This document shows, piece by piece, positions 4,086 to 58,364 of a stretch of 64,000 nt of DNA; position 1 is the stretch's first letter, and each line of letters begins with the position of its first letter. A program made the position numbers and the translations under genes. The stretch lies in IMG/VR virus record IMGVR_UViG_3300035698_029839, positions 62,001-126,000 of that record; one strand, 5' to 3'. Below the pieces are notes generated by a model. The model saw only the letters and a list, made by a program, of their open reading frames with translations. It did not search any database and had not been told where the DNA came from.

Positions 4086-4100
4086 ATTTCTCCTTTTTAT

Positions 4101-4117
4101 CGATATATTATATATCG
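4101..4117. promoter_or_regulatory. Palindrome CGATATAT-T-ATATATCG in the divergent neuB/kdsC intergenic region
   Basis: Perfect 8-bp arms; contains TATAAT on the - strand; near-identical site at 28892-28909. Confidence 0.6.
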
Positions 4118-4136
4118 TCAAAAAGTGAAAAATACT

Positions 4137-26902: not shown

Positions 26903-27943
26903 TTATAAAAAGTTGATATGATTTTTTTCTTTTTTAATGTTCCATAATATTGTGTTAAAAGTATCAGCCCTACACAGTAGGGGGCATTCTTTTAATTTTA
27001 TTTCTGATACAGCTTTTTTTCTTTGTTCTGAGTTCCATATTTCTTTTATTGAATTCTTTTTAATGTCTCCTATTACCATAGATTGTATTCCTCTTCCATG
27101 ACAACAGATATACATTTCTCCAGAAGCAGATATAGTAGTAGCGAATTGATGTCCATAGCATTTATCGTACTGTCTTTTTATATTATTATTGATCATAGCA
27201 TCGTATTTATGTTTGGAGCACAGTATGTTAGTTGTTTCATTTGCCTTTGATAGGAATTGATTGAAATCTATCGGAGTAAAATCTGTTAGGTCTTTTTTGT
27301 TTAGAGGTTTGATAAATGGTCTAAATTGTGCATAATCTACTTCTAATTCTATAGATAAATTTACGAAGTCCATCATATCGTTAAAATTATTTGTACCTAC
27401 ACCAGTTAAATATCCCACTCCTATTGTGCAATCTGATTGAATTCTTTTTTTAGTATCTACTAATGTTTTGATATCTTCTACAACTTTGCTGAAGTCTTTT
27501 GTTCCATGTACTATACGGTGAATTCTTTCTGATCCCGCGTCTAAACTTATTCTTATCCAAGTACAATTAGATAGCAAAGATTCGTTGTTGAAGTTATGCA
27601 ATAGTCCTCCATTTGTGATAAGACCTACGTCCATATTTTTAGATTTTGCATATTTTATAGCTTCTCCAGCATAGGGGTGGCAAAGTGGCTCTCCTCCTCC
27701 TGTAAAGATAATTCCCTTACATCCCATTTCAGAAACTTCTTTTATAGTTTTATTTATTTCGTTTTTAGAGAGTTCTTCTTTTAGAGAAAGATCTCCTCCT
27801 ACACATCCTGGACAGTTATGATTACATTTGTTTGTTAAATCTATTTCTAATGTTATTGCAAAAGGATTTCCTTCTTTATACCACTCATTAACTTCATCTA
27901 AGTGATTTAGTATTTTATCAGATGTGAATTGTTTTGGATTCAT
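26903..27943 (-). CDS. Radical SAM/SPASM-domain protein
   Basis: CNHNCPGC, FTGGGEP and ITNG motifs; C-terminal CYG...ICCH...CPLLC. Confidence 0.92.
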   Translation of the reverse strand: MNPKQFTSDKILNHLDEVNEWYKEGNPFAITLEIDLTNKCNHNCPGCVGGDLSLKEELSKNEINKTIKEVSEMGCKGIIFTGGGEPLCHPYAGEAIKYAKSKNMDVGLITNGGLLHNFNNESLLSNCTWIRISLDAGSERIHRIVHGTKDFSKVVEDIKTLVDTKKRIQSDCTIGVGYLTGVGTNNFNDMMDFVNLSIELEVDYAQFRPFIKPLNKKDLTDFTPIDFNQFLSKANETTNILCSKHKYDAMINNNIKRQYDKCYGHQFATTISASGEMYICCHGRGIQSMVIGDIKKNSIKEIWNSEQRKKAVSEIKLKECPLLCRADTFNTILWNIKKEKNHINFL

Positions 27944-28949: not shown

Positions 28950-29903
28950 ATGAGAAAAATAATTTGTATAACACCTGTTAAACACATAGATGGAGCTATG
29001 GAAGCTCTTCAAGGACATGGAGAAGTTATTTATGACCCGTACATTAGTAAAGTAGATCTTAAAAATAAAATAATTAATAATGAAATAGATACTATATTTT
29101 GCAATCCCTGTAAACAGATTTTTAAGATTGATGAGGAATTATTGAGTGGAACAAAGATTAATACTATTTGCACTTCTTCTACGGGTAATAATCATATAGA
29201 CATGGTTTATTGTAAAATTAACAATATAAATGTTTTGGCTATAACTAAAGATTATAAAATACTTAAGACTATAACAGCTACAGCGGAAATGGCTTTTACT
29301 CTTACCCTAGCTATTATTAGGAATTTAATAAAAGCTGTTAAAAGTTCTAGTGAGTATGATTGGGACTATGAGAAACATAAGAGTAGACAATTAGATCATC
29401 TGTCTGTTGGTATTATCGGATATGGTAGACTGGGAGAGATTTATGCTAGGTTTTGTAGTCCTTTCTTTAAAGATATTTTGGTTGTAGATCCTTATAAAAA
29501 TGTCCCCAACGATTATCAACAAGTAGAGTTTGATGAATTATTGAAAGAGTCAGATGTTATTGCTCTTCATATTCATCTTAACAAAGAGAATCGTCATATA
29601 ATAAATGAAAAGTCAATTAATAAAATGAAAGATGGTGTTTATTTAATTAATACTTCTAGGGGTGACATAGTAGATGAAAAAGCGGTTATAGAAGCTATTA
29701 GAAGCGGAAAGATAAAAGGTTATGCTGCCGATGTTATATCAGATGAGTATAAAGACGGAGTTGCAGGAAGCGAATTAATTAAAGCTATGAATGAAGGATT
29801 GAATATTATTATTACTCCTCATATTTCTGGTTGTACTAAAGAATCTCAAAAAATAGCGTACTTATATGTTATATCTAAATTAGGAAAGAAGAGAAATGAT
29901 TAA
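28950..29903 (+). CDS. D-isomer-specific 2-hydroxyacid dehydrogenase (SerA-like)
   Basis: GIIGYGRLG, LINTSRGDIVDE and ITPHISG motifs. Confidence 0.9.
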   Translation: MRKIICITPVKHIDGAMEALQGHGEVIYDPYISKVDLKNKIINNEIDTIFCNPCKQIFKIDEELLSGTKINTICTSSTGNNHIDMVYCKINNINVLAITKDYKILKTITATAEMAFTLTLAIIRNLIKAVKSSSEYDWDYEKHKSRQLDHLSVGIIGYGRLGEIYARFCSPFFKDILVVDPYKNVPNDYQQVEFDELLKESDVIALHIHLNKENRHIINEKSINKMKDGVYLINTSRGDIVDEKAVIEAIRSGKIKGYAADVISDEYKDGVAGSELIKAMNEGLNIIITPHISGCTKESQKIAYLYVISKLGKKRND

Positions 29904-30606
29904 TAATAAAAAAATATTAGCTATCACTCTGGCAAGAGGAGGATCTAAAGCAGTTAAAAAGAAAAATATTGTCGATATCTGCGGCAAACCATTATTACAA
30001 TATACAACTGACGAAGTTAAGAAAAGTAAATATATTGATAGATATATAGTTTCTACTGACGCTGATGATATTAAAGAAGTTTGTGAAGAATTAGATGTTG
30101 AATATTATAATAGATCTAAAGAATTTGCTCAATCCACTTCTACAACTGAAGATGCATTGATAGAGGTTGTAAACAATATAGGTGAAAATTTTGATTATAT
30201 TGTTGAAATAATGTGTACAAATCCACTTAAGACTATTGAAGATATAGATGGATGTATAGAAAAAATAGAAAATACTGATGCTGATTCTGTTACGTCAGTT
30301 GTAAGGATATGGGACCATCATCCATCAAGAGCAAAATATATTGAGGACGATTTATTAAAAGATTTTTTTCCAGAAAAGCAGCACAGGCGACAAGATTTAA
30401 AACCTCCTGCTTATGTTAGGAATGGATCTGTCTATATTACATATGTAGATAAATTATTAAAATACAAAAATAGATTAAATGGTCTTATTAGGCCATATAT
30501 TATGTCAGAGGATAATACAATCAATATAGATGAACATAGAGATTTAGAATTAGCTAGAATTTTAATAAAAATATTAAGTAAGGATAAAAAAAATGAAAAA
30601 AATTAA
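29896..30606 (+). CDS. neuA: Acylneuraminate cytidylyltransferase (CMP-ulosonate synthetase)
   Basis: LARGGSKAVKKKNI, VSTD, RRQDL, RNGSVY and INIDE..D motifs. Confidence 0.9.
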   Translation: MINNKKILAITLARGGSKAVKKKNIVDICGKPLLQYTTDEVKKSKYIDRYIVSTDADDIKEVCEELDVEYYNRSKEFAQSTSTTEDALIEVVNNIGENFDYIVEIMCTNPLKTIEDIDGCIEKIENTDADSVTSVVRIWDHHPSRAKYIEDDLLKDFFPEKQHRRQDLKPPAYVRNGSVYITYVDKLLKYKNRLNGLIRPYIMSEDNTINIDEHRDLELARILIKILSKDKKNEKN

Positions 30607-31405
30607 GTTAATAGCGGAATTAGGATGGAATTGGATCGGAGATATTTCTCTTGCTAAAGAGATGATTTCAGCAGCAAAAGAATCAGGTGCTGATTATGCC
30701 AAATTTCAATCTTGGAAGGTTGATAGATTATTACCAGGTGCTTGGGATACAGATGGTAGAAGAGAGATATATAAAAAAGCAGAATTAACAGAAGAAAAAC
30801 ATCATATTATGAAAGAATACTGCGATTCTGTAGGAATTAAATTTCTTACTTCTTGTTTTTGCGAGAGAGATATAGATACTATGTTAAATTCTATTTTAAA
30901 TTTTACTAATGAGATTAAAATCCCAGGTGGCGATACGGGATGTCCTGAATTGGTGGAACCAGCTATAGAGAAATTTGATCATGTTTATATGTCTGTAGGT
31001 GCATTGGGTCTAGAAGAATATATTAAATGGGCATCTTATGACAACGTGACATTGATGCATTGTGTTTCTTCTTATCCTTGTAGTTTAGATCACGCTAACT
31101 TCCCAAAAATGAAATTCTTACAATCTCTTACTCCTCGAGTTGGGTATAGCGGACATGTTTTAGGTAATAGAGATGCGATGATTGCTATTGCCATGGGCGC
31201 TACTGTTATTGAGAAGCATTTTACTATTGATAATAATTTACCAGGAAAAGACAATCAGTTTTCTATTGAACCTCATGAGATGAAAGAAATAAAAGATTTT
31301 ATCGATGATTATGAAAAAGTAACAATTAATAGAGGGCTATTAGTACAAGAATGTGAGAGAGTTTATAAGGATAATTATGTAGGTAGATGGATGGGAGGAG
31401 AGTAA
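30593..31405 (+). CDS. neuB: NeuB-family synthase, tandem copy 1
   Basis: IAELGWNWIG, AKFQ, MHCVSSYP, GYSGH and IEKHFT motifs. Confidence 0.88.
   Translation: MKKIKLIAELGWNWIGDISLAKEMISAAKESGADYAKFQSWKVDRLLPGAWDTDGRREIYKKAELTEEKHHIMKEYCDSVGIKFLTSCFCERDIDTMLNSILNFTNEIKIPGGDTGCPELVEPAIEKFDHVYMSVGALGLEEYIKWASYDNVTLMHCVSSYPCSLDHANFPKMKFLQSLTPRVGYSGHVLGNRDAMIAIAMGATVIEKHFTIDNNLPGKDNQFSIEPHEMKEIKDFIDDYEKVTINRGLLVQECERVYKDNYVGRWMGGE
31025..31166 (+). repeat. 142-nt block with 3 mismatches to 31829-31970; 31194-31251 is also identical to 31998-32055
   Basis: Direct comparison, offset 804 nt. Confidence 0.9.
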
Positions 31406-31408
31406 AAA

Positions 31409-32203
31409 ATGAAAAAAGTTAAATTAGTTGCGGAGTTAGGTTGGAGTTGGGTTGGAGATGTTTCTCTTGCTAAAGAGATGGTTTTTGCAGCAAAAGAATC
31501 AGGTGCTGATTGTGCTAAATTTCAAACTTGGAAAGCGGAAAGATTAATACCTGGGCCTTGGGACGAGGATGGCAGAAGAGAGATATATAAAAAAGCAGAA
31601 TTTACAGTAGAAAAACATCATATTATGAAGGACTACTGTGATTCTCTAGGAATAGAATTTATGACTTCTTGTTTTTGCGAGAGAGATATAGATACTATTT
31701 TAGAGTTTGCCAATGAAGTTAAGATTCCAGGTGCAGATGGAAGTTGTATTCCATTAATAGAAAAAGTAGTAGAGAAATTTGATCACGTTTATTTGTCTAC
31801 TGGTGCATTGGGTTTAGAAGAATATATCAAATGGGCATCTTATGACAACGTGACATTGATGCATTGTGTTTCTTCTTATCCTTGTAGTTTAGAGAATGCT
31901 AACTTCCCAAAAATGAAATTCTTACAATCTCTTACTCCTCGAGTTGGGTATAGCGGACATGTTTTAGGTAGCCTGGATGCTATTCTTGCTATCGCTTTGG
32001 GCGCTACTGTTATTGAGAAGCATTTTACTATTGATAATAATTTACCAGGAAAAGATAATAAAATGTCTATTCTTCCAAGTCATATGAAAGAAATAAAAGA
32101 TTTTAGAGATGCTTATGATAAAATGACAATTGATAATGGATTATTAATACAAGAATGTGAGAAAAATTTTAGAAAATGTATGACTGGAAGGTGGGATGGG
32201 TGA
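31409..32203 (+). CDS. neuB: NeuB-family synthase, tandem copy 2
   Basis: VAELGWSWVG, MHCVSSYP, GYSGH and IEKHFT motifs. Confidence 0.88.
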   Translation: MKKVKLVAELGWSWVGDVSLAKEMVFAAKESGADCAKFQTWKAERLIPGPWDEDGRREIYKKAEFTVEKHHIMKDYCDSLGIEFMTSCFCERDIDTILEFANEVKIPGADGSCIPLIEKVVEKFDHVYLSTGALGLEEYIKWASYDNVTLMHCVSSYPCSLENANFPKMKFLQSLTPRVGYSGHVLGSLDAILAIALGATVIEKHFTIDNNLPGKDNKMSILPSHMKEIKDFRDAYDKMTIDNGLLIQECEKNFRKCMTGRWDG

Positions 32204-43345: not shown

Positions 43346-44005
43346 ATGAAAAAAATTAAAGAATATAAAAGGAAATGGGATAATTATGAAATTGGGAATG
43401 TTAAATGGATCGATATTAATAGAGAACATTATAGTAGAAGAAAATTTATAGAATATATTAAAAAAGATAAAATAAAAACAATTATAGAAGTTGGAGGAGG
43501 AGAGCTTATTGAAGCTCAAGATATATTATCTAAGGGTTTGGTTGATAATTATTCTGTTGTTGATGTTTCAGATGTGTTTTTAAAATTTGCTCAAAGTATT
43601 AATGGGCTGAAATCATTCAGGGGGGACATGATTGATATTCCTATGAAAGATAAAGAGTTTGATCTTATTTATTGTAGTTCTGTATTAGAGCATTCTCCAG
43701 ATATTAGAAAGACTATTTCTGAAGCTAGAAGAGTGAGTAGAAAATTTTATTTTACTATGTTTAAATGGAGAATGAAGACAGGTGGGTTAGAATCTGTTTT
43801 TCGTCATAAAAAGGGATATTTTTCGACAGAGTTTAATATAGATATGTTATTAGATTTAATAACAAAATATGGGAATATTAAATATCTTGGAATAAATGGT
43901 AGAGAGGGAGGGGAAGAAGTATTTGATGAATATAGGAAAAATAATCAAGATATCGATTTAAATAGAAATGGCAAGTATCTGAGTATTCAGGGGTCCTGGG
44001 GATAA
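43346..44005 (+). CDS. Class I methyltransferase (Methyltransf_11-like)
   Basis: IIEVGGG, VVDVS and FDLIYCSSVLEH motifs. Confidence 0.85.
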   Translation: MKKIKEYKRKWDNYEIGNVKWIDINREHYSRRKFIEYIKKDKIKTIIEVGGGELIEAQDILSKGLVDNYSVVDVSDVFLKFAQSINGLKSFRGDMIDIPMKDKEFDLIYCSSVLEHSPDIRKTISEARRVSRKFYFTMFKWRMKTGGLESVFRHKKGYFSTEFNIDMLLDLITKYGNIKYLGINGREGGEEVFDEYRKNNQDIDLNRNGKYLSIQGSWG

Positions 44006-44552: not shown

Positions 44553-45227
44553 ATGGAATATTTAAAAGATTATGTTGGTAGTGGTGAAAATAAAGATTTT
44601 CTTATTGTCGGTGGAGGACGTACTATTAAGGATTATGAAGATAAAATTATAGATTTTATAAAGTCTAATTCTATTGTGACTATAGGTATCAATAAATTAC
44701 TTCCATCTATACCAATAAATTATCAATTATGGACTAATAAACAAAGATATATTACTTTGAAAGATGGTGTTATTAAAGAATCTAAATTAATGTTTGGGTG
44801 TAATTTAGATAAGAGGATTATTAAAAAGAATTATGAAGGAGAAGATTATATTTGTGTTAATTATACTTCTCAGTTTTCTGAAGCTATGAAAGAAGAAATA
44901 GATTATAAAGATGGCAAGATATTTGGATTTTTTAGAACGGCAGGAACTTTAGCTATTATGATTGCTCATATTTTTGGAGCTAATAATATTTATATAGTAG
45001 GTATGGATGGTTATACTCTATATGGTAAGGAAGATTTGTTATCTAAGAACAAACATCACCATTGTTATGGGGAAGGATATACTGATGATGCTAATTGGGA
45101 GAAATGTAAGAAAAAAGATGATCAAGTTGATGAAAATTTAAAAGAACTACATAGTTATGGGGTTAATTTTAAAATTATTACCCCTACTAAATTTAAAGAT
45201 TTTTATGATTTTAATATTTTAGGATAA
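44553..45227 (+). CDS. Maf/DUF115 (Cst-II-like) protein 3
   Basis: FLIVGGGRTI, TIGINK and GANNIYIVGMDGY motifs. Confidence 0.68.
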   Translation: MEYLKDYVGSGENKDFLIVGGGRTIKDYEDKIIDFIKSNSIVTIGINKLLPSIPINYQLWTNKQRYITLKDGVIKESKLMFGCNLDKRIIKKNYEGEDYICVNYTSQFSEAMKEEIDYKDGKIFGFFRTAGTLAIMIAHIFGANNIYIVGMDGYTLYGKEDLLSKNKHHHCYGEGYTDDANWEKCKKKDDQVDENLKELHSYGVNFKIITPTKFKDFYDFNILG

Positions 45228-45231
45228 TAAT

Positions 45232-45834
45232 ATGGGAAGTCCAAATAAGGAAGAGCTAAAAATATTATATAAATATGCTAGTAGATGTAATTTTATTATT
45301 GAAACTGGAGGTGGGGGAAAATCAACAATATGGTTAGCTAAAGCTGCTTTAAAATCTGGAGCTACTTTTGTATCCATAGAGGCTGATAAGAATAGAAAGA
45401 TTCCTATTGAAAAAGAATTGGAAGAAGTAATTAATTATAAATATGGATGGTCTGTTACTTATGATGATATTGTTAAAATAGGGGACTCTAGATTTGTAGA
45501 GTCCAGATATAAAACTATAGATGCAGAGATAGCATTTGGGAGAAAAGATCTTATGATAGGAGAAGTGGATTTAATAAGGAAAACTATTGAAGAATTAAAA
45601 TTGCATCTTGATTTCTTTTTTTGTGATACTGGAGAGTATTGCGGTATAGCAGAGTGGAATATAGTAAAAAATAAAATTAAACAGGGAGGCTATTTTGTAG
45701 CCCATGATATATATTTTCCGAAAAGTATAAAATGTTTTCAAGTTATTGAAGAAATTGAAAATAGTAAGGATTGGGAAATGATTATTAAAACTAATAGCAG
45801 ACAGGAATTAGCAGTGGCATGTAAATTAAGGTGA
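45232..45834 (+). CDS. Class I methyltransferase-fold protein
   Basis: IIETGGG, VSIEAD, DFFFCD and GGYFVAHD motifs. Confidence 0.7.
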   Translation: MGSPNKEELKILYKYASRCNFIIETGGGGKSTIWLAKAALKSGATFVSIEADKNRKIPIEKELEEVINYKYGWSVTYDDIVKIGDSRFVESRYKTIDAEIAFGRKDLMIGEVDLIRKTIEELKLHLDFFFCDTGEYCGIAEWNIVKNKIKQGGYFVAHDIYFPKSIKCFQVIEEIENSKDWEMIIKTNSRQELAVACKLR

Positions 45835-45837
45835 TTT

Positions 45838-46542
45838 ATGAAATATCCGATAATGAATAATTTAAATACTGATTTTAAAATGAATAATACATATAGTAAG
45901 TATATTGATGATCAGATGAGTGCAGGGAAAGATTTTCTATTTTCATTGGATGGAGTACCAATTTCTAAAGAGTATCCTGAAAAAGAAGTTTCTTCAGAGA
46001 TATATGATAAGATTTGGGATAAGAAACCTCATCATAATAATGTGCATCCATATATGTCAATAATGGCAGAATTATGTAAAAAGCATTCTCCAGATGTTAA
46101 GCATATTATTGATGTTGGAGCAGGGTTTGGGAATATGGCAATTATGTTTATAGATAAAATTAAACCATTGTCTTATACAGCTTATGAATTTTCAAATGCT
46201 CATGAGAAGATAACGGAACGTTTTAAAAATGTCTCTTGTGAAACAAATGTGATAGTAGATTCATTCAGAGAATGTAGTTTAGAAAAATTTGACTGTGTTG
46301 TTGCAACAGAAATATTTGAACATATTTGTTGGGATATTGAATTTTTATCTAAGATACCTAGCGGTACATATATTTATTTTTCCGTACCATCTCATCACTC
46401 TATAGTGCATGTTCGTGCATTTTTGGTCCCTGAAAGTATATATCTTAGGTATGATGATGTGGTTGATATTATTGATATAAAGACTGTTTATAGACATAAA
46501 GATATTCCTAAATGGTGGTGTGTTGCTGCTAGGAAAAAATAA
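45838..46542 (+). CDS. Class I methyltransferase
   Basis: IIDVGAGFG and FDCVVATEIFEHI motifs. Confidence 0.82.
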   Translation: MKYPIMNNLNTDFKMNNTYSKYIDDQMSAGKDFLFSLDGVPISKEYPEKEVSSEIYDKIWDKKPHHNNVHPYMSIMAELCKKHSPDVKHIIDVGAGFGNMAIMFIDKIKPLSYTAYEFSNAHEKITERFKNVSCETNVIVDSFRECSLEKFDCVVATEIFEHICWDIEFLSKIPSGTYIYFSVPSHHSIVHVRAFLVPESIYLRYDDVVDIIDIKTVYRHKDIPKWWCVAARKK

Positions 46543-46563: not shown

Positions 46564-47379
46564 ATGAAAGAAGAAACATATATAGGTATTATACCTGCAA
46601 GATATCAATCATCACGTTTCCCAGGAAAACCTCTTTGTGATATCTTAGGACAACCTATGATTAGAATAGTTTATGATTCGGTTATGAAGTGGAATAGGTG
46701 GAAAAATGTTTATGTAGCCACTGATAGTGAAAAAATAAAAAAGAGATGTGAGGAATTTAAAGTGCCTGTTATTATGACAAAAGATACTCATACTGATTGT
46801 TTAGATAGAGCGGCAGAAGTGGTGGAAATTTTAGAATCTAATAAAAATGGTGCTGATAAATATGTAGTAGTGCAAGGAGATGAACCTCTATTTAATGTTG
46901 ACACTTTAGATACTGATCTAACTCCTTCCATTATTAATTTTTATACGGAAGTTCATGATCAATATGATAAATATGATAGTAATGCTGTTAAAGTAGTAAT
47001 TTCAAATAATTGTAAGGCTTTATATTTTTCAAGATATTCAGTGCCATATCATGATAATAAAACTAAAAGAACTGATGATGAAGAAGTTGTTTTAAAACAA
47101 ATAGGTGTATATGTTTTTAGCGGAGAAATGTTGAAAATTTATACTAGTTTAAAACAAACTTCTTTAGAGAATATGGAGGGAATTGGGCTAAATCGTCTTA
47201 TAGAAAATGATATAGAAGTACATATGAGATATACTAAGCACGATAGTATAAGTGTTGATACTCCAGAAGATAGAAATAGAATTATAAAATTAATTAAAAA
47301 ATATTATAGTGATATTGGTTCTTCTATTAATGATGATGGTAGTGTTATAAATTGTGATGGAAATAGTAGGATGATATAA
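46564..47379 (+). CDS. kdsB: 3-deoxy-manno-octulosonate cytidylyltransferase family (CMP-Kdo synthetase)
   Basis: IIPARYQSSRFPGKPL, VQGDEP, ALYFSR and SVDTPED motifs. Confidence 0.92.
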   Translation: MKEETYIGIIPARYQSSRFPGKPLCDILGQPMIRIVYDSVMKWNRWKNVYVATDSEKIKKRCEEFKVPVIMTKDTHTDCLDRAAEVVEILESNKNGADKYVVVQGDEPLFNVDTLDTDLTPSIINFYTEVHDQYDKYDSNAVKVVISNNCKALYFSRYSVPYHDNKTKRTDDEEVVLKQIGVYVFSGEMLKIYTSLKQTSLENMEGIGLNRLIENDIEVHMRYTKHDSISVDTPEDRNRIIKLIKKYYSDIGSSINDDGSVINCDGNSRMI

Positions 47380-48308
47380 TGAAATTAATATTGTCAGTTA
47401 CTAAAAGATGTAATATGAGATGTCCTAATTGTTTGTGGATTTTAGAAAAAGGAGATTTTTTTAATAAAGACGATATGCCTCTTCAAGATGCTATAGATAT
47501 TTTTGAATATTATAAAAAAAATAAGTTAAAAAACGTAGTTTTGCAAGGAGAGGGAGAGGTTTTTTTATATCCTTATTTTAAAGAACTTTATTCTTATTTT
47601 CTTAAATCTAAAGTTGCTTTGAATGGAATTACAACTAATGGTTTGATTCTTGATAAATTTTTATATGTTGCTAAAGATGTTGGGCTAACAATTAGCTTAG
47701 ATGGATATGATAGTCAAAGTTATATGGAACATAGAGGTGGTGGGGAAGATCAATTTAACAAAGTATTAGATAATATAAGAGAAGTTTTAAAAGTTAAAAA
47801 TAGAAAAAAAATAGTTATAAATTGTATCGTCTCCCTTACTGATTATAAAAAAATACCAGGCATGATAGCACTAGCAGAATCCTTAGGCGTAGATTATATG
47901 AGATTTGGAAACTACCATCCCATAGCGGGTGATTTAAAACCTTTGTTTGATACTGATAAAGAAGTTGTTGATTTTTATAAAAATATTATTAGCAAAGATG
48001 ATTATAAAGTTAATATCACGCTGCCAGGTTTGATGAGTACAAATAAAGGGAAGCTTAAATGCAGTATGCTTAAGTGCAAAAACGTTGGTTCTGAAGGTTT
48101 TTATTCTCCATGTTGTCATATATCTACAGATGTTAAATATGGATCTTTCCCTAATGAATCAAAAAGTTTAACGGAATTTAAAAAACAATTTAGTAATGCT
48201 AAAAAAATAACCGATCTTCCAGAGCCATGTAGATTATGTCCTAGATTATTTAAAAATAGAATAATTTTTAATAAAGATAGCAAAAAGTGGAGTAAAAAAT
48301 TATTGTGA
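47379..48308 (+). CDS. Radical SAM/SPASM(twitch)-domain protein
   Basis: CNMRCPNC and TTNG motifs; C-terminal C...SPCC...CRLCP. Confidence 0.9.
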   Translation: MKLILSVTKRCNMRCPNCLWILEKGDFFNKDDMPLQDAIDIFEYYKKNKLKNVVLQGEGEVFLYPYFKELYSYFLKSKVALNGITTNGLILDKFLYVAKDVGLTISLDGYDSQSYMEHRGGGEDQFNKVLDNIREVLKVKNRKKIVINCIVSLTDYKKIPGMIALAESLGVDYMRFGNYHPIAGDLKPLFDTDKEVVDFYKNIISKDDYKVNITLPGLMSTNKGKLKCSMLKCKNVGSEGFYSPCCHISTDVKYGSFPNESKSLTEFKKQFSNAKKITDLPEPCRLCPRLFKNRIIFNKDSKKWSKKLL

Positions 48309-49255
48309 ATATACTAATAACTGTATATCCATTTGGTAAGTGTGGAGATAAACCTATTACACTTCTTGAAGGTAGGGGGTGGAATCTAATATTTAATCCT
48401 TTAGAGAGAAGATTGAAAGAAGACGAAGTTAGAGAAATGGTAAAAGGAGTGGATGCAGTAATAGCTGGAACTGAACCATATAACAGAAGAACTATTCAAT
48501 ATGCTAAAGATTTAAAAGTTATTTCTAGATCAGGAATAGGTCTTGATAGTATCGATTATCAAGCGTGTAAAGAGAAAAATATATTAGTTGCAAATACTCC
48601 AGAAGCTCCTTCTGATGCTGTGTCAGATTTAACTATTGCTCAAATTTTTAATTTATTGAGAAATATTTATATATCTAATCAATTCATTAAAAATGGCATG
48701 TGGAAAAGGTTTACAGGCTTATCAATTAGGCAAATAAAAATAGGTATTTTGGGAGTAGGTAGGATAGGTGGTAGAGTTATAAATAGATTAAAGTCATTTG
48801 ATGCAAATATTTTAGCTTGTGATGTAGATATAAATAAAGATATAGATGGAGTTATATGGGTTGATAAGGATACTTTATTTAAAGAATCTGATTTAATATC
48901 TATTCATATCCCGTTAACTAAAAAAAATTATCATTTTGTTGGTATGAATGAATTGAGCATGATGAAAAAAGGTGCATATTTAATTAATACTTCTAGAGGC
49001 AGCGTGTTGAATGAGAGAGATCTGGAATCATGTCTTATTAACCATCATCTAGCAGGGGCAGCTTTAGATGTTTTTGAAAAAGAGCCATATGAGGGATGTA
49101 TGAAGGATATGGATAATGTTCTATTGACTGCTCATCATGCTTCTTCTGATAGATTATCAAAATATAAAATGGAATTAGGAGCAGTTGAAAATTGTATAAA
49201 ACTTCTTAATGGAGAAATTCCAAAAGACATAGTTACGGAGAAAGATTTTGAATAA
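48305..49255 (+). CDS. Phosphoglycerate-dehydrogenase-like 2-hydroxyacid dehydrogenase
   Basis: SRSGIGLDSID, GILGVGRIG, LINTSRG and LDVFEKEP motifs. Confidence 0.9.
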   Translation: MNILITVYPFGKCGDKPITLLEGRGWNLIFNPLERRLKEDEVREMVKGVDAVIAGTEPYNRRTIQYAKDLKVISRSGIGLDSIDYQACKEKNILVANTPEAPSDAVSDLTIAQIFNLLRNIYISNQFIKNGMWKRFTGLSIRQIKIGILGVGRIGGRVINRLKSFDANILACDVDINKDIDGVIWVDKDTLFKESDLISIHIPLTKKNYHFVGMNELSMMKKGAYLINTSRGSVLNERDLESCLINHHLAGAALDVFEKEPYEGCMKDMDNVLLTAHHASSDRLSKYKMELGAVENCIKLLNGEIPKDIVTEKDFE

Positions 49256-50000
49256 ATTAAAAGAAGCATTAAAAAATAATAAAGTATCGTTGGGGACTTG
49301 GATTCAAATTCCTCATCCTTCTATCGTAGAAATTATTGCTCATAATTGTAGAGGTAAATTAGATTGGATGTGTATAGATATGGAGCATGGTTCTATAGAT
49401 ATAGAGTCTATGACTAATCTAATTAGAACTATTGAGAAGTATAATATCACTCCTATTGTGAGGATACCTAAGAATGATTATATATGGATTCACAGGGTTT
49501 TAGATGCTGGGGCTAAGGGTCTAGTCATACCTATGGTGAAAAGTGAATCTGAGGCATCTGATGCTGTTTTAGAGACATTGTATCCTCCGTTAGGAAATAG
49601 AAGCTTTGGATATAGTCGTGCTAATATATATGGGGCTGATTTTGAAGAATATATTAAAAGTGCTAATGACGATATAGCTATAATTATTCAAATTGAACAT
49701 ATTGATTCTATAAATGAATTAGATTTTATTTTATCTGTTAAGGGTATAGATGGGACATTTATTGGACCTTATGATCTGTCAGGATCTTTAGGAGTATCTG
49801 GAGATTTTGATAATGAAGCATATCAGAATGCTTTATCATTTTATATATCAAAATCTAATGAGCATAAAATTCCGATGGGTATTCATATTGTTAGACCGAA
49901 TTTGGAAAAAGTAAAATTTTGTAAAAATGTTGGGTATAAAATGATAGCAATTGGTACTGATGCTGTTCTTCTTGAAGAGAAATGCAAAGAAATTTTTTAA
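49248..50000 (+). CDS. HpcH/HpaI class II pyruvate aldolase
   Basis: CIDMEHG, VLDAGA, YPPLGNRS, QIEH and FIGPYDLSGSLG motifs. Confidence 0.92.
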   Translation: MNKLKEALKNNKVSLGTWIQIPHPSIVEIIAHNCRGKLDWMCIDMEHGSIDIESMTNLIRTIEKYNITPIVRIPKNDYIWIHRVLDAGAKGLVIPMVKSESEASDAVLETLYPPLGNRSFGYSRANIYGADFEEYIKSANDDIAIIIQIEHIDSINELDFILSVKGIDGTFIGPYDLSGSLGVSGDFDNEAYQNALSFYISKSNEHKIPMGIHIVRPNLEKVKFCKNVGYKMIAIGTDAVLLEEKCKEIF

Positions 50001-50010
50001 GGATATATCT

Positions 50011-50673
50011 ATGAGTAAAAATGAAGAGTTATTTTTATTTGGTAATAAGGGTAAATTAGATAATCCACCACAAGTAAAAATTATTGATATAATTCCTCTT
50101 TATCCTAATAAAGATAATATGTTTTTTATAGAAGTTGGTGCTAACAACGGAGTTGATAATGATCCAATTAGAGGTTGGGTTGAAGAATACAATTGGACAG
50201 GTATTTTAATAGAGCCTGTTGAGCAAGCATTTGAAGAGTTGAGGAGTAATTATGAAGGTATAAAAAATGTTTATTTTGAGAATGTGGCTATTTCTAACTC
50301 TGATGAAAAAAATGTTATCATGTATAAACCAAAATCTTCTAAAATAGCATCTCTTGATAAGAATCATCCTCCTATGAAAAACAAATACAAAAAAATAGAT
50401 GTTAGATTAAAAAAACTTAATGATATAGTCGATAAATATAATGTAGATCATATAGATTTGTTAAATATAGATGCGGAAGGTTATGATTTTGAAGTTATAA
50501 AGAGTTTAGATTTAAATAAGTGTAGGCCTATTATAGTTCATTATGAGCATAGGCATTTAGGTGATTGGAAAGTTGATTGTGAAACTTATTTACTTAATAA
50601 TGGATATTTTTTATGTTGGAATAGAAATAATACAATAGCAATAGATAGGGTGTTTAAGGAGAGTTTTGAATGA
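50011..50673 (+). CDS. FkbM-family methyltransferase
   Basis: FIEVGANNG, ILIEP, IDAEGYD and YEHRH motifs; start moved to ATG 50011. Confidence 0.88.
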   Translation: MSKNEELFLFGNKGKLDNPPQVKIIDIIPLYPNKDNMFFIEVGANNGVDNDPIRGWVEEYNWTGILIEPVEQAFEELRSNYEGIKNVYFENVAISNSDEKNVIMYKPKSSKIASLDKNHPPMKNKYKKIDVRLKKLNDIVDKYNVDHIDLLNIDAEGYDFEVIKSLDLNKCRPIIVHYEHRHLGDWKVDCETYLLNNGYFLCWNRNNTIAIDRVFKESFE

Positions 50674-55509: not shown

Positions 55510-56328
55510 ATGACCAAAGTAGGAATTATAGGTTATGGAATTATAGGAAAAGCAGTATTAAAAATGTTTAAGGACAAAGTAGAACTTTGTGTTCATGATA
55601 TAAATATTTCTACTGATGATAAAATATATTTAAATATGGTTGGAATAGAATATTCTGATAAGGAAGAAATTAATAGTTGTGATATTGCTTTTGTTTGTGT
55701 CCCTACCCCACATAATAAGTATGATGGCTTGGATATGTCTATTGTTGAAAGTGTTATAAAAGAGTTTAATCCAGGAATGTTTGTTATATGTTCTGCTTTA
55801 CAACCTGGCACAGCAGATATTTTAATGAATAAATATGGAAAGAAAATAGTTGTACAGCCAGAATATTTTGGAGAGACAACGAATCATCCTCTTACTAATT
55901 TATCTCAAAATCCATTTATGATTTTAGGCGGTAAAAATGAAGATGTTGATGAAGTCATAAAACTTTATCAAAAAGTTTATAATGCTAATATCAGAATTAG
56001 AAAGGTGACAGCTTTAGAAGCTGAAGTGATTAAACTTTCTGAGAATAGAGCTATAGCATATAAGGTTGCTCAATGTCAAGAATTGTATGATGCTTGTAAA
56101 AATTCTAAGGTAGATTATGAAACTATTAGACAAGCTGTTTATGGGGATGACCCAAGATTTAATTTATGGTGGACTTTTGTTTATGAAGATAACAGAGGTA
56201 TGAATAGTAAGTGTATTCCTAAGGATGTTTACGGGTGGTATAGGTGGGCAGATGATTCAGGAGTTAATCCACGATTAACTGAAGCCTTATTAGATTATAA
56301 CCACAGTTTAGTAAAGAAAGATGAGTAA
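55510..56328 (+). CDS. UDP-glucose/GDP-mannose dehydrogenase family protein (short, intein-free)
   Basis: GIIGYGIIG, CVPTP and divergent catalytic GMNSKCIPKD; lacks the C-terminal UDP-binding domain. Confidence 0.82.
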   Translation: MTKVGIIGYGIIGKAVLKMFKDKVELCVHDINISTDDKIYLNMVGIEYSDKEEINSCDIAFVCVPTPHNKYDGLDMSIVESVIKEFNPGMFVICSALQPGTADILMNKYGKKIVVQPEYFGETTNHPLTNLSQNPFMILGGKNEDVDEVIKLYQKVYNANIRIRKVTALEAEVIKLSENRAIAYKVAQCQELYDACKNSKVDYETIRQAVYGDDPRFNLWWTFVYEDNRGMNSKCIPKDVYGWYRWADDSGVNPRLTEALLDYNHSLVKKDE

Positions 56329-57421
56329 TATGAAAGATACTATTGGAGTAATTGGTTGCGGTTTTGTGGGGAAGGCAGTTGTAAAAGGTTTCGAGCAATT
56401 TGCAGATGTTAAAATCTATGATACGGATGAAAAAAAATCAATACATGATTTTAAAGAAGTAGTAAATTGTGATTTTGTTTTTATATGTTTGCCTACACCA
56501 ATGATATCATCAGAAGGAGGAAGAGCTAATTTATCAATACTTGAGAAATGTATGGAAGATATTAGTAATGTAGAAAATAGAAATAAAGATTCTATTTATG
56601 TTATTAAATCGACAGTCCCAATTGGGACAACAAAAAGATTTGTATCTCAGTATAAAAATTTGCGTATAGTTCATAATCCAGAATTTCTAACTGCACGTTC
56701 TGCTATAATAGATTTTATTTGTCCTGCAAGAAATATTGTTGGTGCAGATTGGGGACGTGATGGCAAACCTGTTCAGGATTTATTAATAGATAGATTTCCA
56801 GGTACTCGTTGTATAGCTATGACATCTGAAGAATCAGAAACGGTTAAATATATGGCAAATTCTTTTTTAGCAACAAAGGTTATATTTTTCAATGAAATGA
56901 GATTGCTAGTTGATAAGAAAAATTTAGACTGGGATAGAGTCATAAGTGGAGTTATGTCAGATGGTAGGATAGGAACTTCTCATTATCAAGTACCAGGACA
57001 TGATGGGGACAGGGGTTTTGGTGGATTGTGTGTTTTACCTGATGCTAAAGTTAGTGTGAGTAGTAATTTTTGTTACTTCCCAGAATTTTTAAATGATGAA
57101 GATAGTAGCTATATGAGAAGTCATGCTTATTCTAATAGGGAAATAAGAATAGAAGATTTATATGACGAATTTAAAGATAGAAAGAAATTTCATTTTTTGT
57201 TAATACAATCTTGCAATGATAAAATAGAAGAAATTGAAGATAAATATATCAGAGATGTGACTGTTAGGGATATAGATGAAGAAATTTATTGTTTTGAAAC
57301 TTCAAATGGTTTGTTTCGTTGCACATCTAATCATTTAATGCCTGTCGAAAGACAAGGAAAAATAATTATTATTCCTGCAAAAGAAATAAAGGAAACGGAT
57401 TTGCTTTTCTCGAAAGTATAA
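56321..57421 (+). CDS. ugd: UDP-glucose 6-dehydrogenase N-extein (236 aa) plus split intein N-fragment (130 aa)
   Basis: GCGFVG, KSTVP, NPEFL, KYMANSFLATK and GFGGL, then intein block A CVLPDAKV from 57029 and block B CTSNHLMPV. Confidence 0.92.
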   Translation: MSNMKDTIGVIGCGFVGKAVVKGFEQFADVKIYDTDEKKSIHDFKEVVNCDFVFICLPTPMISSEGGRANLSILEKCMEDISNVENRNKDSIYVIKSTVPIGTTKRFVSQYKNLRIVHNPEFLTARSAIIDFICPARNIVGADWGRDGKPVQDLLIDRFPGTRCIAMTSEESETVKYMANSFLATKVIFFNEMRLLVDKKNLDWDRVISGVMSDGRIGTSHYQVPGHDGDRGFGGLCVLPDAKVSVSSNFCYFPEFLNDEDSSYMRSHAYSNREIRIEDLYDEFKDRKKFHFLLIQSCNDKIEEIEDKYIRDVTVRDIDEEIYCFETSNGLFRCTSNHLMPVERQGKIIIIPAKEIKETDLLFSKV

Positions 57422-58364
57422 TGGATAAACAGGTTTCTTAAAATACTGGATAGAAAATGTTAATAGAATATTTATCAGAAAAAATTAATACAAAAACGAA
57501 TATAAGGTTCAAATGTGATCAGTGTGGAAACTTATATATTAGGAATAATAAACCATATATAAATATGAAAAAAAGTATTTATTATGATAAGGATTATTGT
57601 TGTTTATGCTGGAGAAAAATTTTAAATAATCGTCCTGAATATAAAAAGAATATGAGTATATCTATACGGAAGATGTATGAAGATCATCCAGAGATAAGAA
57701 GTAAAATTTCTAAAACTTTGAAAAAAAATGGGGCAAATATAGGGAATAAAAATGGGATGAAACAAATTAAAGCAAGAATAAAGGCATCGATGACAAGAAA
57801 AAAAAAGTTTTTAGATCCAGTTTTTAGAAAAGCTCATTCTGATATGATTAAAAAGGCGTGGGCAGATGGTAAATTTGATGGAGTTAGAGTTGGGCAGTGT
57901 AAATGGCATGAATATAAACATTCTAATGGGAATGTTTATAAAGTTCAGGGAACATGGGAGCTAGCATTTATAAAATGGTTAGATGAAAATAATTTGAAAT
58001 TTAAATGCCATAGAGGAAGAATTCCATACAGAATTAAAGGGGAAAATAGAAATTATTATCCAGATTTTTGGGTTGATAAATGGGATGCTTTTATCGATGT
58101 AAAGTGTAGATATTTTTATGATATAAGTAAGAATAAGTTTAAAGCTATAAAAAAAAGTAATCCAAATATAAATATAAAAATTTTATTTAAAAAAGATTTA
58201 TTAAAATTAGGAGTTGTTTTGTGAAAAAAATAAAAATTAATAAAATAAAAAAAGAAAGCTATAAGGGTAAAGTTTATAATCTTGAATTAGAAACAGAAAA
58301 TTTTGATACTGATGGAGATGATTTGTTCTGGATAGAGCAGGAAACAGGAATTGTTACTCATAAT
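57029..58364 (+). mobile_element. Split intein plus free-standing endonuclease (fractured-gene element)
   Basis: IntN 57029-57421, endonuclease 57457-58224 and IntC 58221-58364, each in a different reading frame. Confidence 0.88.
57457..58224 (+). CDS. Free-standing homing endonuclease: NUMOD3-like basic region plus PD-(D/E)xK (TnsA-N-like) nuclease domain
   Basis: CDQCG...CCLC; EIRSKISKTLK; VQGTWELAFIKWLD, IPY and YYPDFWV...FIDVK motifs. Confidence 0.8.
   Translation: MLIEYLSEKINTKTNIRFKCDQCGNLYIRNNKPYINMKKSIYYDKDYCCLCWRKILNNRPEYKKNMSISIRKMYEDHPEIRSKISKTLKKNGANIGNKNGMKQIKARIKASMTRKKKFLDPVFRKAHSDMIKKAWADGKFDGVRVGQCKWHEYKHSNGNVYKVQGTWELAFIKWLDENNLKFKCHRGRIPYRIKGENRNYYPDFWVDKWDAFIDVKCRYFYDISKNKFKAIKKSNPNINIKILFKKDLLKLGVVL

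What the first reader, a model, noticed from the sequence alone, without database searches (positions are those of the whole stretch)
46564..50000. KdsB - radical SAM - 2-hydroxyacid dehydrogenase - HpcH aldolase module: possible new 2-keto-acid sugar pathway
Seen: four coupled genes, with no kdsA or kdsD in the window. A parallel module at 28950-32203 pairs another 2-hydroxyacid dehydrogenase with NeuA and NeuB. Established: HpcH aldolases condense pyruvate with aldehydes to give 4-hydroxy-2-keto acids, and KdsB activates 2-keto acids with CTP. Inference: an aldolase rather than KdsA supplies a non-Kdo ulosonate or short acyl substituent, which is redox- and radically tailored and CMP-activated.
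Basis: inference. Interest (0 to 1): 0.62.

Follow-up and report, generated by a model that had tools for sequence, protein, structure and literature searches.

The report
Aldolase-based CMP-sugar-acid cassette in huge phage
A giant bacteriophage from salt lakes carries a conserved gene cassette that appears to build and CTP-activate an unusual acidic sugar with a pyruvate-type aldolase instead of the usual Kdo or sialic-acid synthase, which would be a new way for viruses and a few bacteria to make surface sugars.

Summary
The four genes are real, same-strand and joined by overlapping stop and start codons. The window is part of a 298-kb IMG/VR virus contig with 33 tRNAs and a tmRNA, so it is a huge phage. 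The genes sit in a ~55-kb glycan-synthesis island.

The conserved unit is three genes: a KdsB-like cytidylyltransferase, a 2-hydroxyacid dehydrogenase and an HpcH aldolase. In 15 related loci, the aldolase lies near the KdsB-like gene in 11 and the dehydrogenase in 10. One of these loci is a planctomycete polysaccharide locus. The radical SAM gene is an accessory, present at the same spot in only two other contigs.

Upstream, a sialyltransferase-fold (MptE/Maf-like) gene and methyltransferases recur with the three genes. Two phages add a HAD phosphatase after the aldolase.

No KdsA or KdsD homologue is on this contig or in a complete 548-kb relative. The KdsB-like clade keeps its catalytic residues but has replaced residues invariant in 23 canonical KdsBs. 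The planctomycete also keeps a canonical KdsB.

Best reading: an aldolase-based route to a non-Kdo CMP-ulosonic acid. The sugar's identity and the dehydrogenase's role are inferred only. I rate it a new variant of a known kind, interest 0.62.

The parts
46564..47379 (+). KdsB-like CMP-ulosonate synthetase (clade 'KdsBL')
   Evidence: Pfam and NCBIfam hits. It is 33-36% identical to solved KdsBs. Catalytic and CTP-binding residues are kept, but G79C, T80L, N102V, H179Q, E208G, Q209L, L210N and G216D are fixed in 121 clade members against 23 canonical KdsBs. The split between the two groups has SH-like support 1.0 and a stem of 1.45 substitutions per site.
47379..48308 (+). Accessory radical SAM enzyme with a Cys-rich C-terminus (SPASM/twitch-like)
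   Evidence: CX3CX2C at residues 11-18. C149, C228, C245 and C246 are invariant; C284 and C287 are present in the four sequences that reach that region. The word search found only three homologues. One of them has the same KdsBL-rSAM-2HADH-HpcH order in L015. The gene is absent at this position in L001, L006, L011, L069 and L072. The fold matches generic SPASM/twitch radical SAM enzymes.
48305..49255 (+). NAD-type D-2-hydroxyacid dehydrogenase (SerA/GhrB-like)
   Evidence: Both Pfam domains are present. The PGDH and glyoxylate-reductase equivalog models score far below their cut-offs. The best PDB match is the P. horikoshii 'PGDH' 1WWK at 185 bits. The GxGxxG motif and the Arg, Glu and His residues are present. 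A homologue lies within 6 kb of KdsBL in 10 of 15 loci.
49248..50000 (+). Class II (metal-dependent) HpcH/HpaI-family keto-acid aldolase
   Evidence: Pfam scores 98 bits; the HpaI, GarL and RhmA equivalog models score below their cut-offs. The equivalents of H45, R70, E149 and D175 are kept. A homologue lies within 6 kb of KdsBL in 11 of 15 loci. The clade also contains PVC-bacterial enzymes paired with a 2HADH.
44553..45227 (+). MptE/Maf-like protein, candidate CMP-ulosonate glycosyltransferase
   Evidence: The PF01973 hit is weak. The AF2 model has pLDDT 86. Foldseek matches MptE HPPK and the CMP-dependent sialyltransferases Cst-I/Cst-II and GT29, at TM 0.41-0.54 normalised by the query. Homologues lie near KdsBL in 6 of 14 other loci, including bacterial L011 at 47% identity; L006 has three copies.
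45232..45834 (+). Methyltransf_24-type SAM methyltransferase
   Evidence: Weak Pfam hit. Homologues lie directly upstream of KdsBL in L011 (57%), L006 (50%) and L069 (43%).
45838..46542 (+). Methyltransf_23/12-type SAM methyltransferase
   Evidence: Pfam hit. Homologues lie upstream of KdsBL in L015 and L069.
43346..44005 (+). Methyltransf_11-type SAM methyltransferase
   Evidence: Pfam hit. Homologues are found in L001, L014, L015 and L064 near the cassette.
28950..32203 (+). Parallel module: 2HADH, NeuA-like cytidylyltransferase and two NeuB-family synthases in which only the NeuB domain was detected
   Evidence: Pfam hits. The NeuA-like (63%), 2HADH (45%) and NeuB (49%) genes recur together in marine L012, with a radical SAM/SPASM gene and a GFO_IDH_MocA gene.
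26903..27943 (-). Radical SAM/SPASM enzyme beside the NeuB module
   Evidence: Pfam Radical_SAM plus SPASM.

Best explanation
The genes form a biosynthetic cassette for a CMP-activated 2-ulosonic acid that is not Kdo, carried by a huge phage inside a ~55-kb glycan island.

Shown here: the gene families, their intact catalytic motifs, their coupling, their co-conservation, the lack of KdsA and KdsD, and the remodelling of the KdsB-like clade.

Inferred mechanism:
1. The class II HpcH aldolase replaces KdsA or NeuB as the carbon-carbon bond-forming enzyme. It condenses a three-carbon 2-keto acid with an aldose or aldose phosphate.
2. The SerA/GhrB-like dehydrogenase supplies that keto acid. My favoured version is hydroxypyruvate or 3-phosphohydroxypyruvate made from D-glycerate or 3-phosphoglycerate, which would give a 3-hydroxylated, Ko-like ulosonate.
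3. Where present (L001, L015), a HAD phosphatase removes a phosphate.
4. The KdsB-like enzyme forms the CMP-glycoside.
5. SAM methyltransferases modify the sugar. In this phage and a few relatives the radical SAM enzyme does so too.
6. The MptE/Maf-like sialyltransferase-fold protein transfers the sugar to an unknown acceptor, either a virion protein or a host surface.
For: - Family assignments and intact motifs.
- Overlapping stop and start codons between successive genes.
- KdsBL, 2HADH and HpcH are contiguous in L001, L006, L011, L015, L069 and L072. They are permuted but contiguous in L063, and lie within 4 kb in L064.
- L011 is a cellular contig carrying ribosomal genes. There the cassette MptE-like / MTase_24 / KdsBL / 2HADH / HpcH sits among dTDP-sugar, DegT aminotransferase and methyltransferase genes, a biosynthetic context.
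- No PF00793 or SIS match in the own contig. No PF00793 match in the 548-kb relative that CheckV rates 100% complete.
- Among 301 Planctomycetota genomes only G001 has the clade type (70% identity); the next best match is 37%.
- G001 also has a canonical KdsB carrying the HQSGTDR, RHLGIY and LEQLR motifs, plus two DAHP_synth_1 genes.
- Residues invariant in canonical KdsB are replaced and fixed in the clade, and the two groups split with SH-like support 1.0.
- The MptE-like model matches CMP-dependent sialyltransferases. Full-length Maf enzymes can use CMP-Kdo (10.1101/2020.06.03.131540).
- A HAD phosphatase follows HpcH in L015 and L001.
- Some HpcH-family enzymes accept hydroxypyruvate as donor (PMC7610986).
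- A 2HADH-HpcH pair recurs in PVC bacteria, beside BNR sialidase-like genes in two loci and SASA/GDSL esterase genes in one. This fits a keto-acid link between the two enzymes.
Against: - No enzyme was assayed, and the sugar is unknown.
- The dehydrogenase's role is inference. It scores similarly against PGDH and glyoxylate/hydroxypyruvate reductase models, all below cut-off.
- Only 19 of 571 class II aldolases screened accepted hydroxypyruvate.
- A second 2HADH pairs with PEP-dependent NeuB genes. Hydroxypyruvate supply does not obviously explain that pairing.
- Marine loci L012 and L068 have KdsBL next to a distant HpcH without a 2HADH. L014, L066 and L071 have KdsBL without an aldolase in the flanks.
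- The own contig is only about 62% complete, so a kdsA elsewhere in this phage cannot be excluded, and the host surely has one if it is Gram-negative.
- I could not verify from the open literature which Kdo hydroxyls are contacted by the replaced residues. Only Q98, Y185 and the metal-binding aspartates were confirmed, and those are conserved here.
Confidence: 0.6

Rival explanations
1. This is ordinary auxiliary metabolism. The phage KdsB simply boosts host CMP-Kdo, using Kdo made by host KdsA. The aldolase and dehydrogenase are unrelated central-metabolism helpers that happen to sit next to it.
For: The protein passes two NCBIfam KdsB cut-offs. Some deposited phages encode canonical KdsB. 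The host would supply KdsA. The catalytic residues Q98, Y185 and the aspartates are kept.
Against: The three genes stay together across 45-78% protein identity, in phages and in one bacterium. The clade has fixed replacements at positions invariant in canonical KdsB. G001 keeps a canonical KdsB as well. The neighbours are glycosyltransferase-like and methyltransferase genes, not central metabolism.
Confidence: 0.1
2. The KdsB-like enzyme activates a nonulosonic acid made by one of the island's NeuB synthases. The aldolase and dehydrogenase only make a small hydroxy-acid, such as glycerate or lactate, that is attached to that sugar as a substituent.
For: The window has three NeuB-family genes. 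The contig has three strong CTP_transf_3 genes. Many methyltransferases are present. Glyceroyl-type groups are known on Campylobacter nonulosonic acids, for example the 2,3-di-O-methylglyceroyl group reported in 10.64898/2026.04.20.719630.
Against: No NeuB lies within the flanks of L011, L015, L069 or L072, yet all carry KdsBL-2HADH-HpcH. A pyruvate aldolase is not needed to make glycerate or lactate. The island's NeuB modules have their own NeuA-like partner.
Confidence: 0.12
3. The aldolase and dehydrogenase work in the breakdown direction. The phage salvages or degrades a host ulosonic acid, and the KdsB-like enzyme re-activates salvaged sugar.
For: The closest cellular aldolases (50-55% identity) sit with a 2HADH. 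In L002 and L004 a BNR sialidase-like gene is adjacent, and L002 also has SASA, GDSL esterase, MFS transporter and GntR genes, a catabolic-looking context. Aldolases are reversible.
Against: The phage and L011 contexts contain no hydrolase, transporter or regulator. They do contain transferase-like, methyltransferase and nucleotide-sugar genes. A HAD phosphatase after the aldolase in two phages mirrors biosynthetic synthase-phosphatase-cytidylyltransferase logic.
Confidence: 0.08

Closest known systems
Canonical CMP-Kdo pathway (KdsD, KdsA, KdsC, KdsB)
   Same: The last step uses a KdsB-family cytidylyltransferase with the same catalytic and CTP-binding motifs. Two phages have a phosphatase after the condensing enzyme, giving the order synthase, phosphatase, cytidylyltransferase.
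   Different: No KdsA or KdsD is present. The condensing enzyme is a metal-dependent HpcH aldolase using a free keto acid, not PEP. A 2-hydroxyacid dehydrogenase is added. The KdsB-like clade has replaced H181, the EQL of the EQLR motif, and the G-T of the SGTDR motif (E. coli-type numbering, as recalled).
Nonulosonic acid pathways (NeuB/PseI/LegI with NeuA/PseF/LegF) and Maf flagellin glycosyltransferases
   Same: The sugar is CMP-activated, is followed by an MptE/Maf-domain or sialyltransferase-fold protein, and methyltransferases are abundant. Such modules lie in the same island.
   Different: The synthase is not NeuB-type. The cytidylyltransferase is KdsB-type, not NeuA-type. The MptE-like protein is a minimal 224-aa domain scoring below the Pfam cut-off.
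Class II pyruvate aldolases HpaI, GarL and YfaU/RhmA, and SwHKA (hydroxyketoacid aldolase)
   Same: Same fold and same catalytic His, Arg, Glu and Asp. The family is known to condense pyruvate or hydroxypyruvate with hydroxy-aldehydes.
   Different: All characterised members are catabolic or used as biocatalysts. I found none described as the synthase of a nucleotide-sugar pathway. This clade has its own invariant polar residues (Q20, R83, Y122, R124, N126, H213).
Chemoenzymatic one-pot synthesis of CMP-sialic acids (sialic acid aldolase plus CMP-sialic acid synthetase)
   Same: The same two-step logic: a reversible aldolase pulled forward by CTP-driven activation.
   Different: That scheme is a laboratory design using the class I aldolase NanA. 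Here the arrangement is natural, uses a class II aldolase, and is coupled to a dehydrogenase.
Virus-encoded glycan machineries (for example the Kdo genes of giant viruses and the KdsB genes of some phages)
   Same: A virus carries its own nucleotide-sugar genes.
   Different: In GenBank phages the best KdsB match is 36% identical (canonical type) and the best HpcH match is 32%. KdsBL, HpcH and the MptE-like protein match no PHROG family.

Membership tests
KdsB (CMP-Kdo synthetase) | Scores above the curated family HMM cut-offs | tested here: met
   NF003952 scores 231.2 against 193. TIGR00466 scores 157.5 against 155.2, barely above. Three other KdsB models score below their cut-offs.
KdsB (CMP-Kdo synthetase) | CTP-binding P-loop, the QGDEP motif and the metal-binding aspartates | tested here: met
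   P11, R13, S16, R18, K22, Q104, D106, E107, P108, K143, R157, Y183, R211 and D232 are the same in the clade and in canonical KdsB.
KdsB (CMP-Kdo synthetase) | Remaining residues that are invariant in canonical KdsB (SGTDR, N before QGDEP, H of RHxGxY, EQLR) | tested here: not met
   G79C, T80L, N102V, H179Q, E208G, Q209L, L210N, G216D and a 5-residue insert are fixed in 121 clade members against 23 canonical sequences.
KdsB (CMP-Kdo synthetase) | Works with KdsA, KdsC and KdsD in the same genome | tested here: not met
   No PF00793 or SIS match in the own contig, which is 62% complete. No PF00793 match in complete G002. KdsC was not searched.
KdsB (CMP-Kdo synthetase) | Catalytic preference for Kdo | not testable with these tools
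   Needs an enzyme assay.
HpcH/HpaI class II aldolase (PF03328) | Family HMM match and the catalytic His45, Arg70, Glu149 and Asp175 | tested here: met
   Pfam scores 98.3 against 25. H47, R72, E150 and D176 are invariant in 117 clade members.
HpaI, GarL or RhmA (specific equivalogs) | Score above the equivalog cut-off | tested here: not met
   Scores of 178.5, 151.6 and 137.2 bits against cut-offs of 368.8, 406.8 and 441.
D-2-hydroxyacid dehydrogenase | Both domains, a GxGxxG NAD site and the Arg-Glu-His catalytic residues | tested here: met
   Pfam scores 161 and 78 bits. The sequence was read directly.
3-phosphoglycerate dehydrogenase, or glyoxylate/hydroxypyruvate reductase | Score above the equivalog cut-off | tested here: not met
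   PGDH scores 209.5 against 454. Glyoxylate reductase scores 184.3 against 455. GhrB scores 140.8 against 492.
Radical SAM, SPASM/twitch subgroup | CX3CX2C motif plus C-terminal auxiliary-cluster cysteines | tested here: inconclusive
   CX3CX2C is present and the C-terminal cysteines are conserved. There is no Pfam SPASM hit, and the C-terminal part of the model has low confidence.
Maf / MptE-like (PF01973) CMP-sugar transferases | Family HMM match and a sialyltransferase-like fold | tested here: inconclusive
   PF01973 scores 22.8 against a cut-off of 34.6. The fold matches MptE, Cst-I/II and GT29 at TM 0.41-0.54 (query-normalised) with probability 1.00. Transferase activity was not tested.

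The most novel reading that the evidence does not exclude
Huge phages, and by transfer a few bacteria, carry a KdsA- and NeuB-independent route to a previously undescribed CMP-activated ulosonic acid. A class II aldolase condenses hydroxypyruvate or phosphohydroxypyruvate, made by the adjacent SerA-like dehydrogenase, with an aldose. The resulting 3-hydroxylated (Ko-like) or otherwise non-Kdo acid sugar is methylated, in some phages radical-SAM-tailored, and installed by a minimal Maf-like transferase. PVC bacteria would hold the matching catabolic pair.
Probability: 0.3. Interest if true: 0.78.

Novelty: new variant of a known kind. Interest (0 to 1): 0.62.

Why it matters
All known CMP-activated sugar acids (Kdo, sialic, legionaminic and pseudaminic acids) are built by PEP-dependent synthases. 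A natural pathway using a reversible keto-acid aldolase pulled forward by CTP activation would add a new biosynthetic logic. It would also add a new sugar to the glycan repertoire.

Further consequences would follow:
- It would give biocatalysis a ready-made enzyme pair.
- It would explain what a widespread clade of genes annotated 'KdsB' in organisms and viruses without LPS synthesis genes is doing.
- It would show that huge phages invest about 55 kb in making complex acidic, methylated glycans. That bears on how such phages decorate virions or remodel host surfaces.

Tried and rejected
- A viral-contig scan with the radical SAM protein found no relative.
- The word search for the radical SAM protein gave only three homologues.
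The only clade-type hit was the 'Woesearchaeota' contig already in hand. That scan therefore says little about distribution in cells.
- Literature look-ups for the roles of KdsB pocket residues confirmed only Q98, Y185 and the metal-binding aspartates. My recollection that His181 and Glu210/Gln211 line the Kdo pocket is unverified.
- No paper in the library links HpcH with a cytidylyltransferase or an ulosonic acid.
- Laying salt-lake contigs on the module gave only short pieces. They confirm both junctions of the radical SAM gene but show no credible variant lacking it. The single 1,994-base 'joint' has a 21-base side and was disregarded.
- The fold search for the radical SAM model was generic, matching SuiB, MoaA, SkfB, BlsE and viperin at TM about 0.5, and assigns no reaction.
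- My first reading of the KdsB tree was wrong because the tree's root lay inside the clade. Searches corrected it.
- NF003952 does not discriminate the clade from canonical KdsB.
- I considered that the KdsB-like enzyme might cytidylylate an open-chain 2-hydroxy acid made by the dehydrogenase. I rejected this on chemical grounds, because a CMP monoester of a simple secondary alcohol is not a usable group-transfer donor.
- I considered glyoxylate as the aldolase acceptor and rejected it, because the product, 4-hydroxy-2-oxoglutarate, cannot form a sugar ring.
- The alignment of the clade's invariant His213 with EcHpaI Leu212 or SwHKA Phe210, next to donor C3, could not be fixed without the SwHKA sequence. 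It remains a lead only.


Full report
**Observation**

Successive genes overlap by 1, 4 and 8 bases, the usual sign of translational coupling.

Pfam and NCBIfam identify the four proteins:
- A KdsB-family cytidylyltransferase. NF003952 scores 231 bits against a cut-off of 193. TIGR00466 scores 157.5 against 155.2.
- A radical SAM protein with CX3CX2C at residues 11-18 and a Cys-rich C-terminus.
- A two-domain D-2-hydroxyacid dehydrogenase. It is closest to the PGDH and glyoxylate/hydroxypyruvate reductase models, but all score far below their cut-offs.
- An HpcH/HpaI class II aldolase. The HpaI, GarL and RhmA models all score below their cut-offs.

The catalytic residues of the aldolase (equivalents of His45, Arg70, Glu149 and Asp175) are present. 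So are the GxGxxG motif and the Arg, Glu and His residues of the dehydrogenase.

The parallel module at 28950-32203 is also real. It holds a 2HADH, a NeuA-like gene and two tandem NeuB-family genes in which only the NeuB domain was detected.

**Context**

The window is bases 62001-126000 of a single 297,710-bp contig of 31% G+C. IMG/VR lists the contig as a linear virus record, and CheckV rates it about 62% complete. It carries 33 tRNA genes within about 12 kb, plus a tmRNA. This is a huge phage. Near-identical DNA occurs in salt-lake metagenomes from twelve studies.

Almost the whole window is one same-strand glycan island. It contains:
- GT1, GT2 and GT4 glycosyltransferases.
- More than a dozen SAM methyltransferases.
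- Three NeuB-family genes.
- Three radical SAM genes.
- Three MptE-like genes.
- Two 2HADHs.
- UDP-sugar dehydrogenase-like genes.
- RmlA-, RmlB- and RmlD-like genes.
- A second pyruvate-aldolase-type gene of the RraA-like family.

**What is conserved**

A 548-kb phage that CheckV rates 100% complete (IMGVR_UViG_3300033145_003233; L001, G002) has a syntenic island. In it, KdsB-like (75% identity), 2HADH (59%) and HpcH (70%) are adjacent, with no radical SAM gene between them.

The same trio, again without the radical SAM gene, occurs in several other places:
- A 394-kb contig and L006.
- L069, L070 and L072.
- L063, in permuted order.
- L064, spread over 4 kb.

The trio also occurs in a cellular contig, L011, from Planctomycetes bacterium ADurb.Bin401. 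That contig carries ribosomal protein, SSB and PRPP synthetase genes. There the cassette reads MptE-like (47%), Methyltransf_24 (57%), KdsB-like (70%), 2HADH (49%), HpcH (55%). It sits inside a dTDP-sugar, aminotransferase and methyltransferase locus. Its G+C is lower than that of its flanks.

Across 15 distinct loci that hold a clade-type KdsB-like gene (window included), an HpcH homologue lies within 6 kb in 11. A 2HADH homologue of 40% identity or more lies within 6 kb in 10. Among the 14 loci other than the window, an MptE-like homologue is present in 6.

The radical SAM gene has only three homologues in the word search. One of them (63% identity) sits in L015 in the same KdsB-like, radical SAM, 2HADH, HpcH order. 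A 38% relative lies 6 kb from the KdsB-like gene in L014. The radical SAM gene is therefore an accessory tailoring gene of one sub-lineage, not part of the core.

A HAD-type phosphatase directly follows HpcH in both L015 and L001. No homologue of it is on the window's own contig.

**Is the KdsB-like enzyme a Kdo enzyme?**

No KdsA (PF00793) or KdsD (SIS) homologue is on the contig. None for KdsA is in the complete 548-kb relative either.

The KdsB-like proteins form a clade that is 54-80% identical internally but only 30-40% identical to canonical KdsBs. In 301 Planctomycetota genomes only G001 has the clade type, at 70% identity; the next best match is 37%. In a tree, 23 canonical and 121 clade sequences split with SH-like support 1.0 on a stem of 1.45 substitutions per site.

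The clade keeps the CTP-binding and catalytic residues, including the equivalents of Gln98 and Tyr185. Those two bind Kdo O5 in E. coli KdsB (PMC12199768). The metal-binding aspartates are kept too (PMC2901514).

Positions invariant in the canonical set are replaced and fixed in the clade:
- SGTDR becomes DCLDR.
- The Asn before QGDEP becomes Val.
- The His of RHxGxY becomes Gln.
- LEQLR becomes IGLNR.
- A Gly becomes Asp.
- Five residues are inserted.

The planctomycete that carries the cassette also has a canonical KdsB with all the canonical motifs, split over two contig ends. It has two DAHP_synth_1 genes as well.

Taken together, the KdsB-like gene is a paralogue with a different sugar substrate. 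Which sugar positions the replaced residues contact I could not verify.

**The transferase**

The 224-aa MptE-like protein at 44553-45227 gave a confident model, with pLDDT 86. Its best structural matches are the MptE kinase fold and the CMP-dependent sialyltransferases Cst-I, Cst-II and GT29. Full-length Maf proteins, which contain this domain, can transfer Kdo from CMP-Kdo. I therefore take it as the candidate transferase for the cassette's product. This is inference.

**The dehydrogenase**

Enzymes of the 2HADH family act on small 2-keto or 2-hydroxy acids. The HpcH clade that includes the phage enzymes also includes PVC-bacterial enzymes of 50-55% identity. Three of the four I examined are again directly preceded by a 2HADH. 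Two of those three (L002, L004) sit beside BNR sialidase-like genes, and L002 also has SASA and GDSL esterase, MFS transporter and GntR genes. Two different 2HADH lineages, only 30% identical to each other, are thus paired with one aldolase clade. This argues for a direct metabolic link.

The link that makes chemical sense in both directions is the three-carbon keto acid. In biosynthesis, hydroxypyruvate or 3-phosphohydroxypyruvate would be made from D-glycerate or 3-PG. In catabolism, hydroxypyruvate would be reduced to glycerate. Some HpcH-family enzymes accept hydroxypyruvate as donor and then give 3,4-dihydroxy-2-keto acids. The HAD phosphatase in two phages would fit a phosphorylated intermediate.

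This step is the least secure part of the model, for two reasons. The second 2HADH of the island pairs with PEP-dependent NeuB genes. And marine loci have the KdsB-like gene plus a distant HpcH without any 2HADH.

**The radical SAM enzyme**

The model (pLDDT 72) matches generic SPASM/twitch radical SAM enzymes. I can say only that it is likely to tailor the sugar or the CMP-sugar. Oxidation, epimerisation, dehydration or decarboxylation are the precedented reactions for sugar-modifying members of this group, by my own knowledge.

**Comparison with what is known**

The logic resembles the Kdo and nonulosonic-acid pathways: condensation, an optional phosphatase, CTP activation, then a Maf or sialyltransferase-like transfer. 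The condensing enzyme, however, is a class II keto-acid aldolase.

I found no paper linking HpcH with a cytidylyltransferase or an ulosonic acid. No GenBank phage has the clade-type KdsB or this HpcH clade; the best matches are 36% and 32% identical. The KdsB-like protein, HpcH and the MptE-like protein match no PHROG family. New CMP-activated ulosonic acids are still being discovered by mass spectrometry.

**Verdict**

The ideas of an aldolase replacing KdsA and of a non-Kdo ulosonate stand. The four-gene unit should be redrawn as a three-gene core with variable accessories (radical SAM, HAD) and conserved upstream partners (MptE-like transferase, methyltransferases).
- The finding is a new variant of a known kind of system, carried mainly by huge phages.
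- Confidence is about 0.6 for the general mechanism and about 0.3 for the hydroxypyruvate version.

Noticed in passing
whole contig G000:C1 (window = 62001-126000); tRNAs at C1:246009-257786, tmRNA at C1:177330-177679: The contig is a huge-phage fragment of 298 kb, about 62% complete. It has 33 clustered tRNA genes and a tmRNA. Near-identical DNA occurs in salt-lake metagenomes from 12 studies.
   Followed up: partly
window 10763-11494 (+): An RraA-like gene of the HMG/CHA aldolase family (PF03737) sits between glycosyltransferases. It is a second pyruvate-aldolase-type enzyme in the same glycan island.
   Followed up: no
window 3249-4121 (-), 6638-7483 (+), 5574-6272 (+): A third NeuB-family gene lies on the opposite strand. 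A third radical SAM gene and a peptide deformylase-like gene lie upstream of the main island.
   Followed up: no
window 30593-31405 and 31409-32203 (+): Two tandem NeuB-family paralogues of about 265 aa show only the NeuB domain. They are preceded by a 2HADH and a NeuA-like gene. The same 2HADH, NeuA and NeuB association, with a radical SAM/SPASM gene and a GFO_IDH_MocA gene, recurs in marine L012 and L013.
   Followed up: partly
window 60951-61829 (+) and 33655-34407 (+): Two further MptE-like (Maf-domain) genes are present, making three candidate CMP-sugar transferases in the window.
   Followed up: no
window 55510-56328 and 56321-57421 (+); 57457-58224 (+): Two adjacent, overlapping UDPG/GDP-mannose dehydrogenase-like ORFs each have the N-terminal and central domains only. 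They are followed by an endonuclease I-like / DUF7487 gene inside the sugar island, possibly a homing-endonuclease insertion.
   Followed up: no
L001/L065 (IMGVR_UViG_3300033145_003233, 548 kb); L014/L079; proteins P0017, P0155, P0217, P0222: Contigs that look viral are deposited at NCBI under MAGs labelled Asgardarchaeia, Woesearchaeota and Lokiarchaeota. One is a 548-kb IMG/VR record; L014 carries topoisomerase and dCMP deaminase genes and many small ORFs. This may be mis-binning or may hint at the host. One KdsB-like locus (L066) comes from a record named GVMAG.
   Followed up: no
L002 8997-10753, L004 9000-10774, L078 7012-8765: In Planctomycetota, Omnitrophota and Phycisphaerae MAGs a 2HADH-HpcH pair recurs. 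In L002 and L004 it sits next to BNR sialidase-like genes, and in L002 also next to SASA, GDSL esterase, MFS and GntR genes. This may be an undescribed catabolic route for an acidic sugar.
   Followed up: partly
L015 7278-9255: TPP-dependent E1 alpha and beta (transketolase-like) genes, an SDR and epimerase/dehydratase genes follow the cassette. They hint at two-carbon branching of a sugar in that phage.
   Followed up: no
window 49951-50673 (+): An FkbM-family methyltransferase ORF, as called from its first TTG, overlaps the last 50 bases of the aldolase gene. Its true start is probably further downstream.
   Followed up: no
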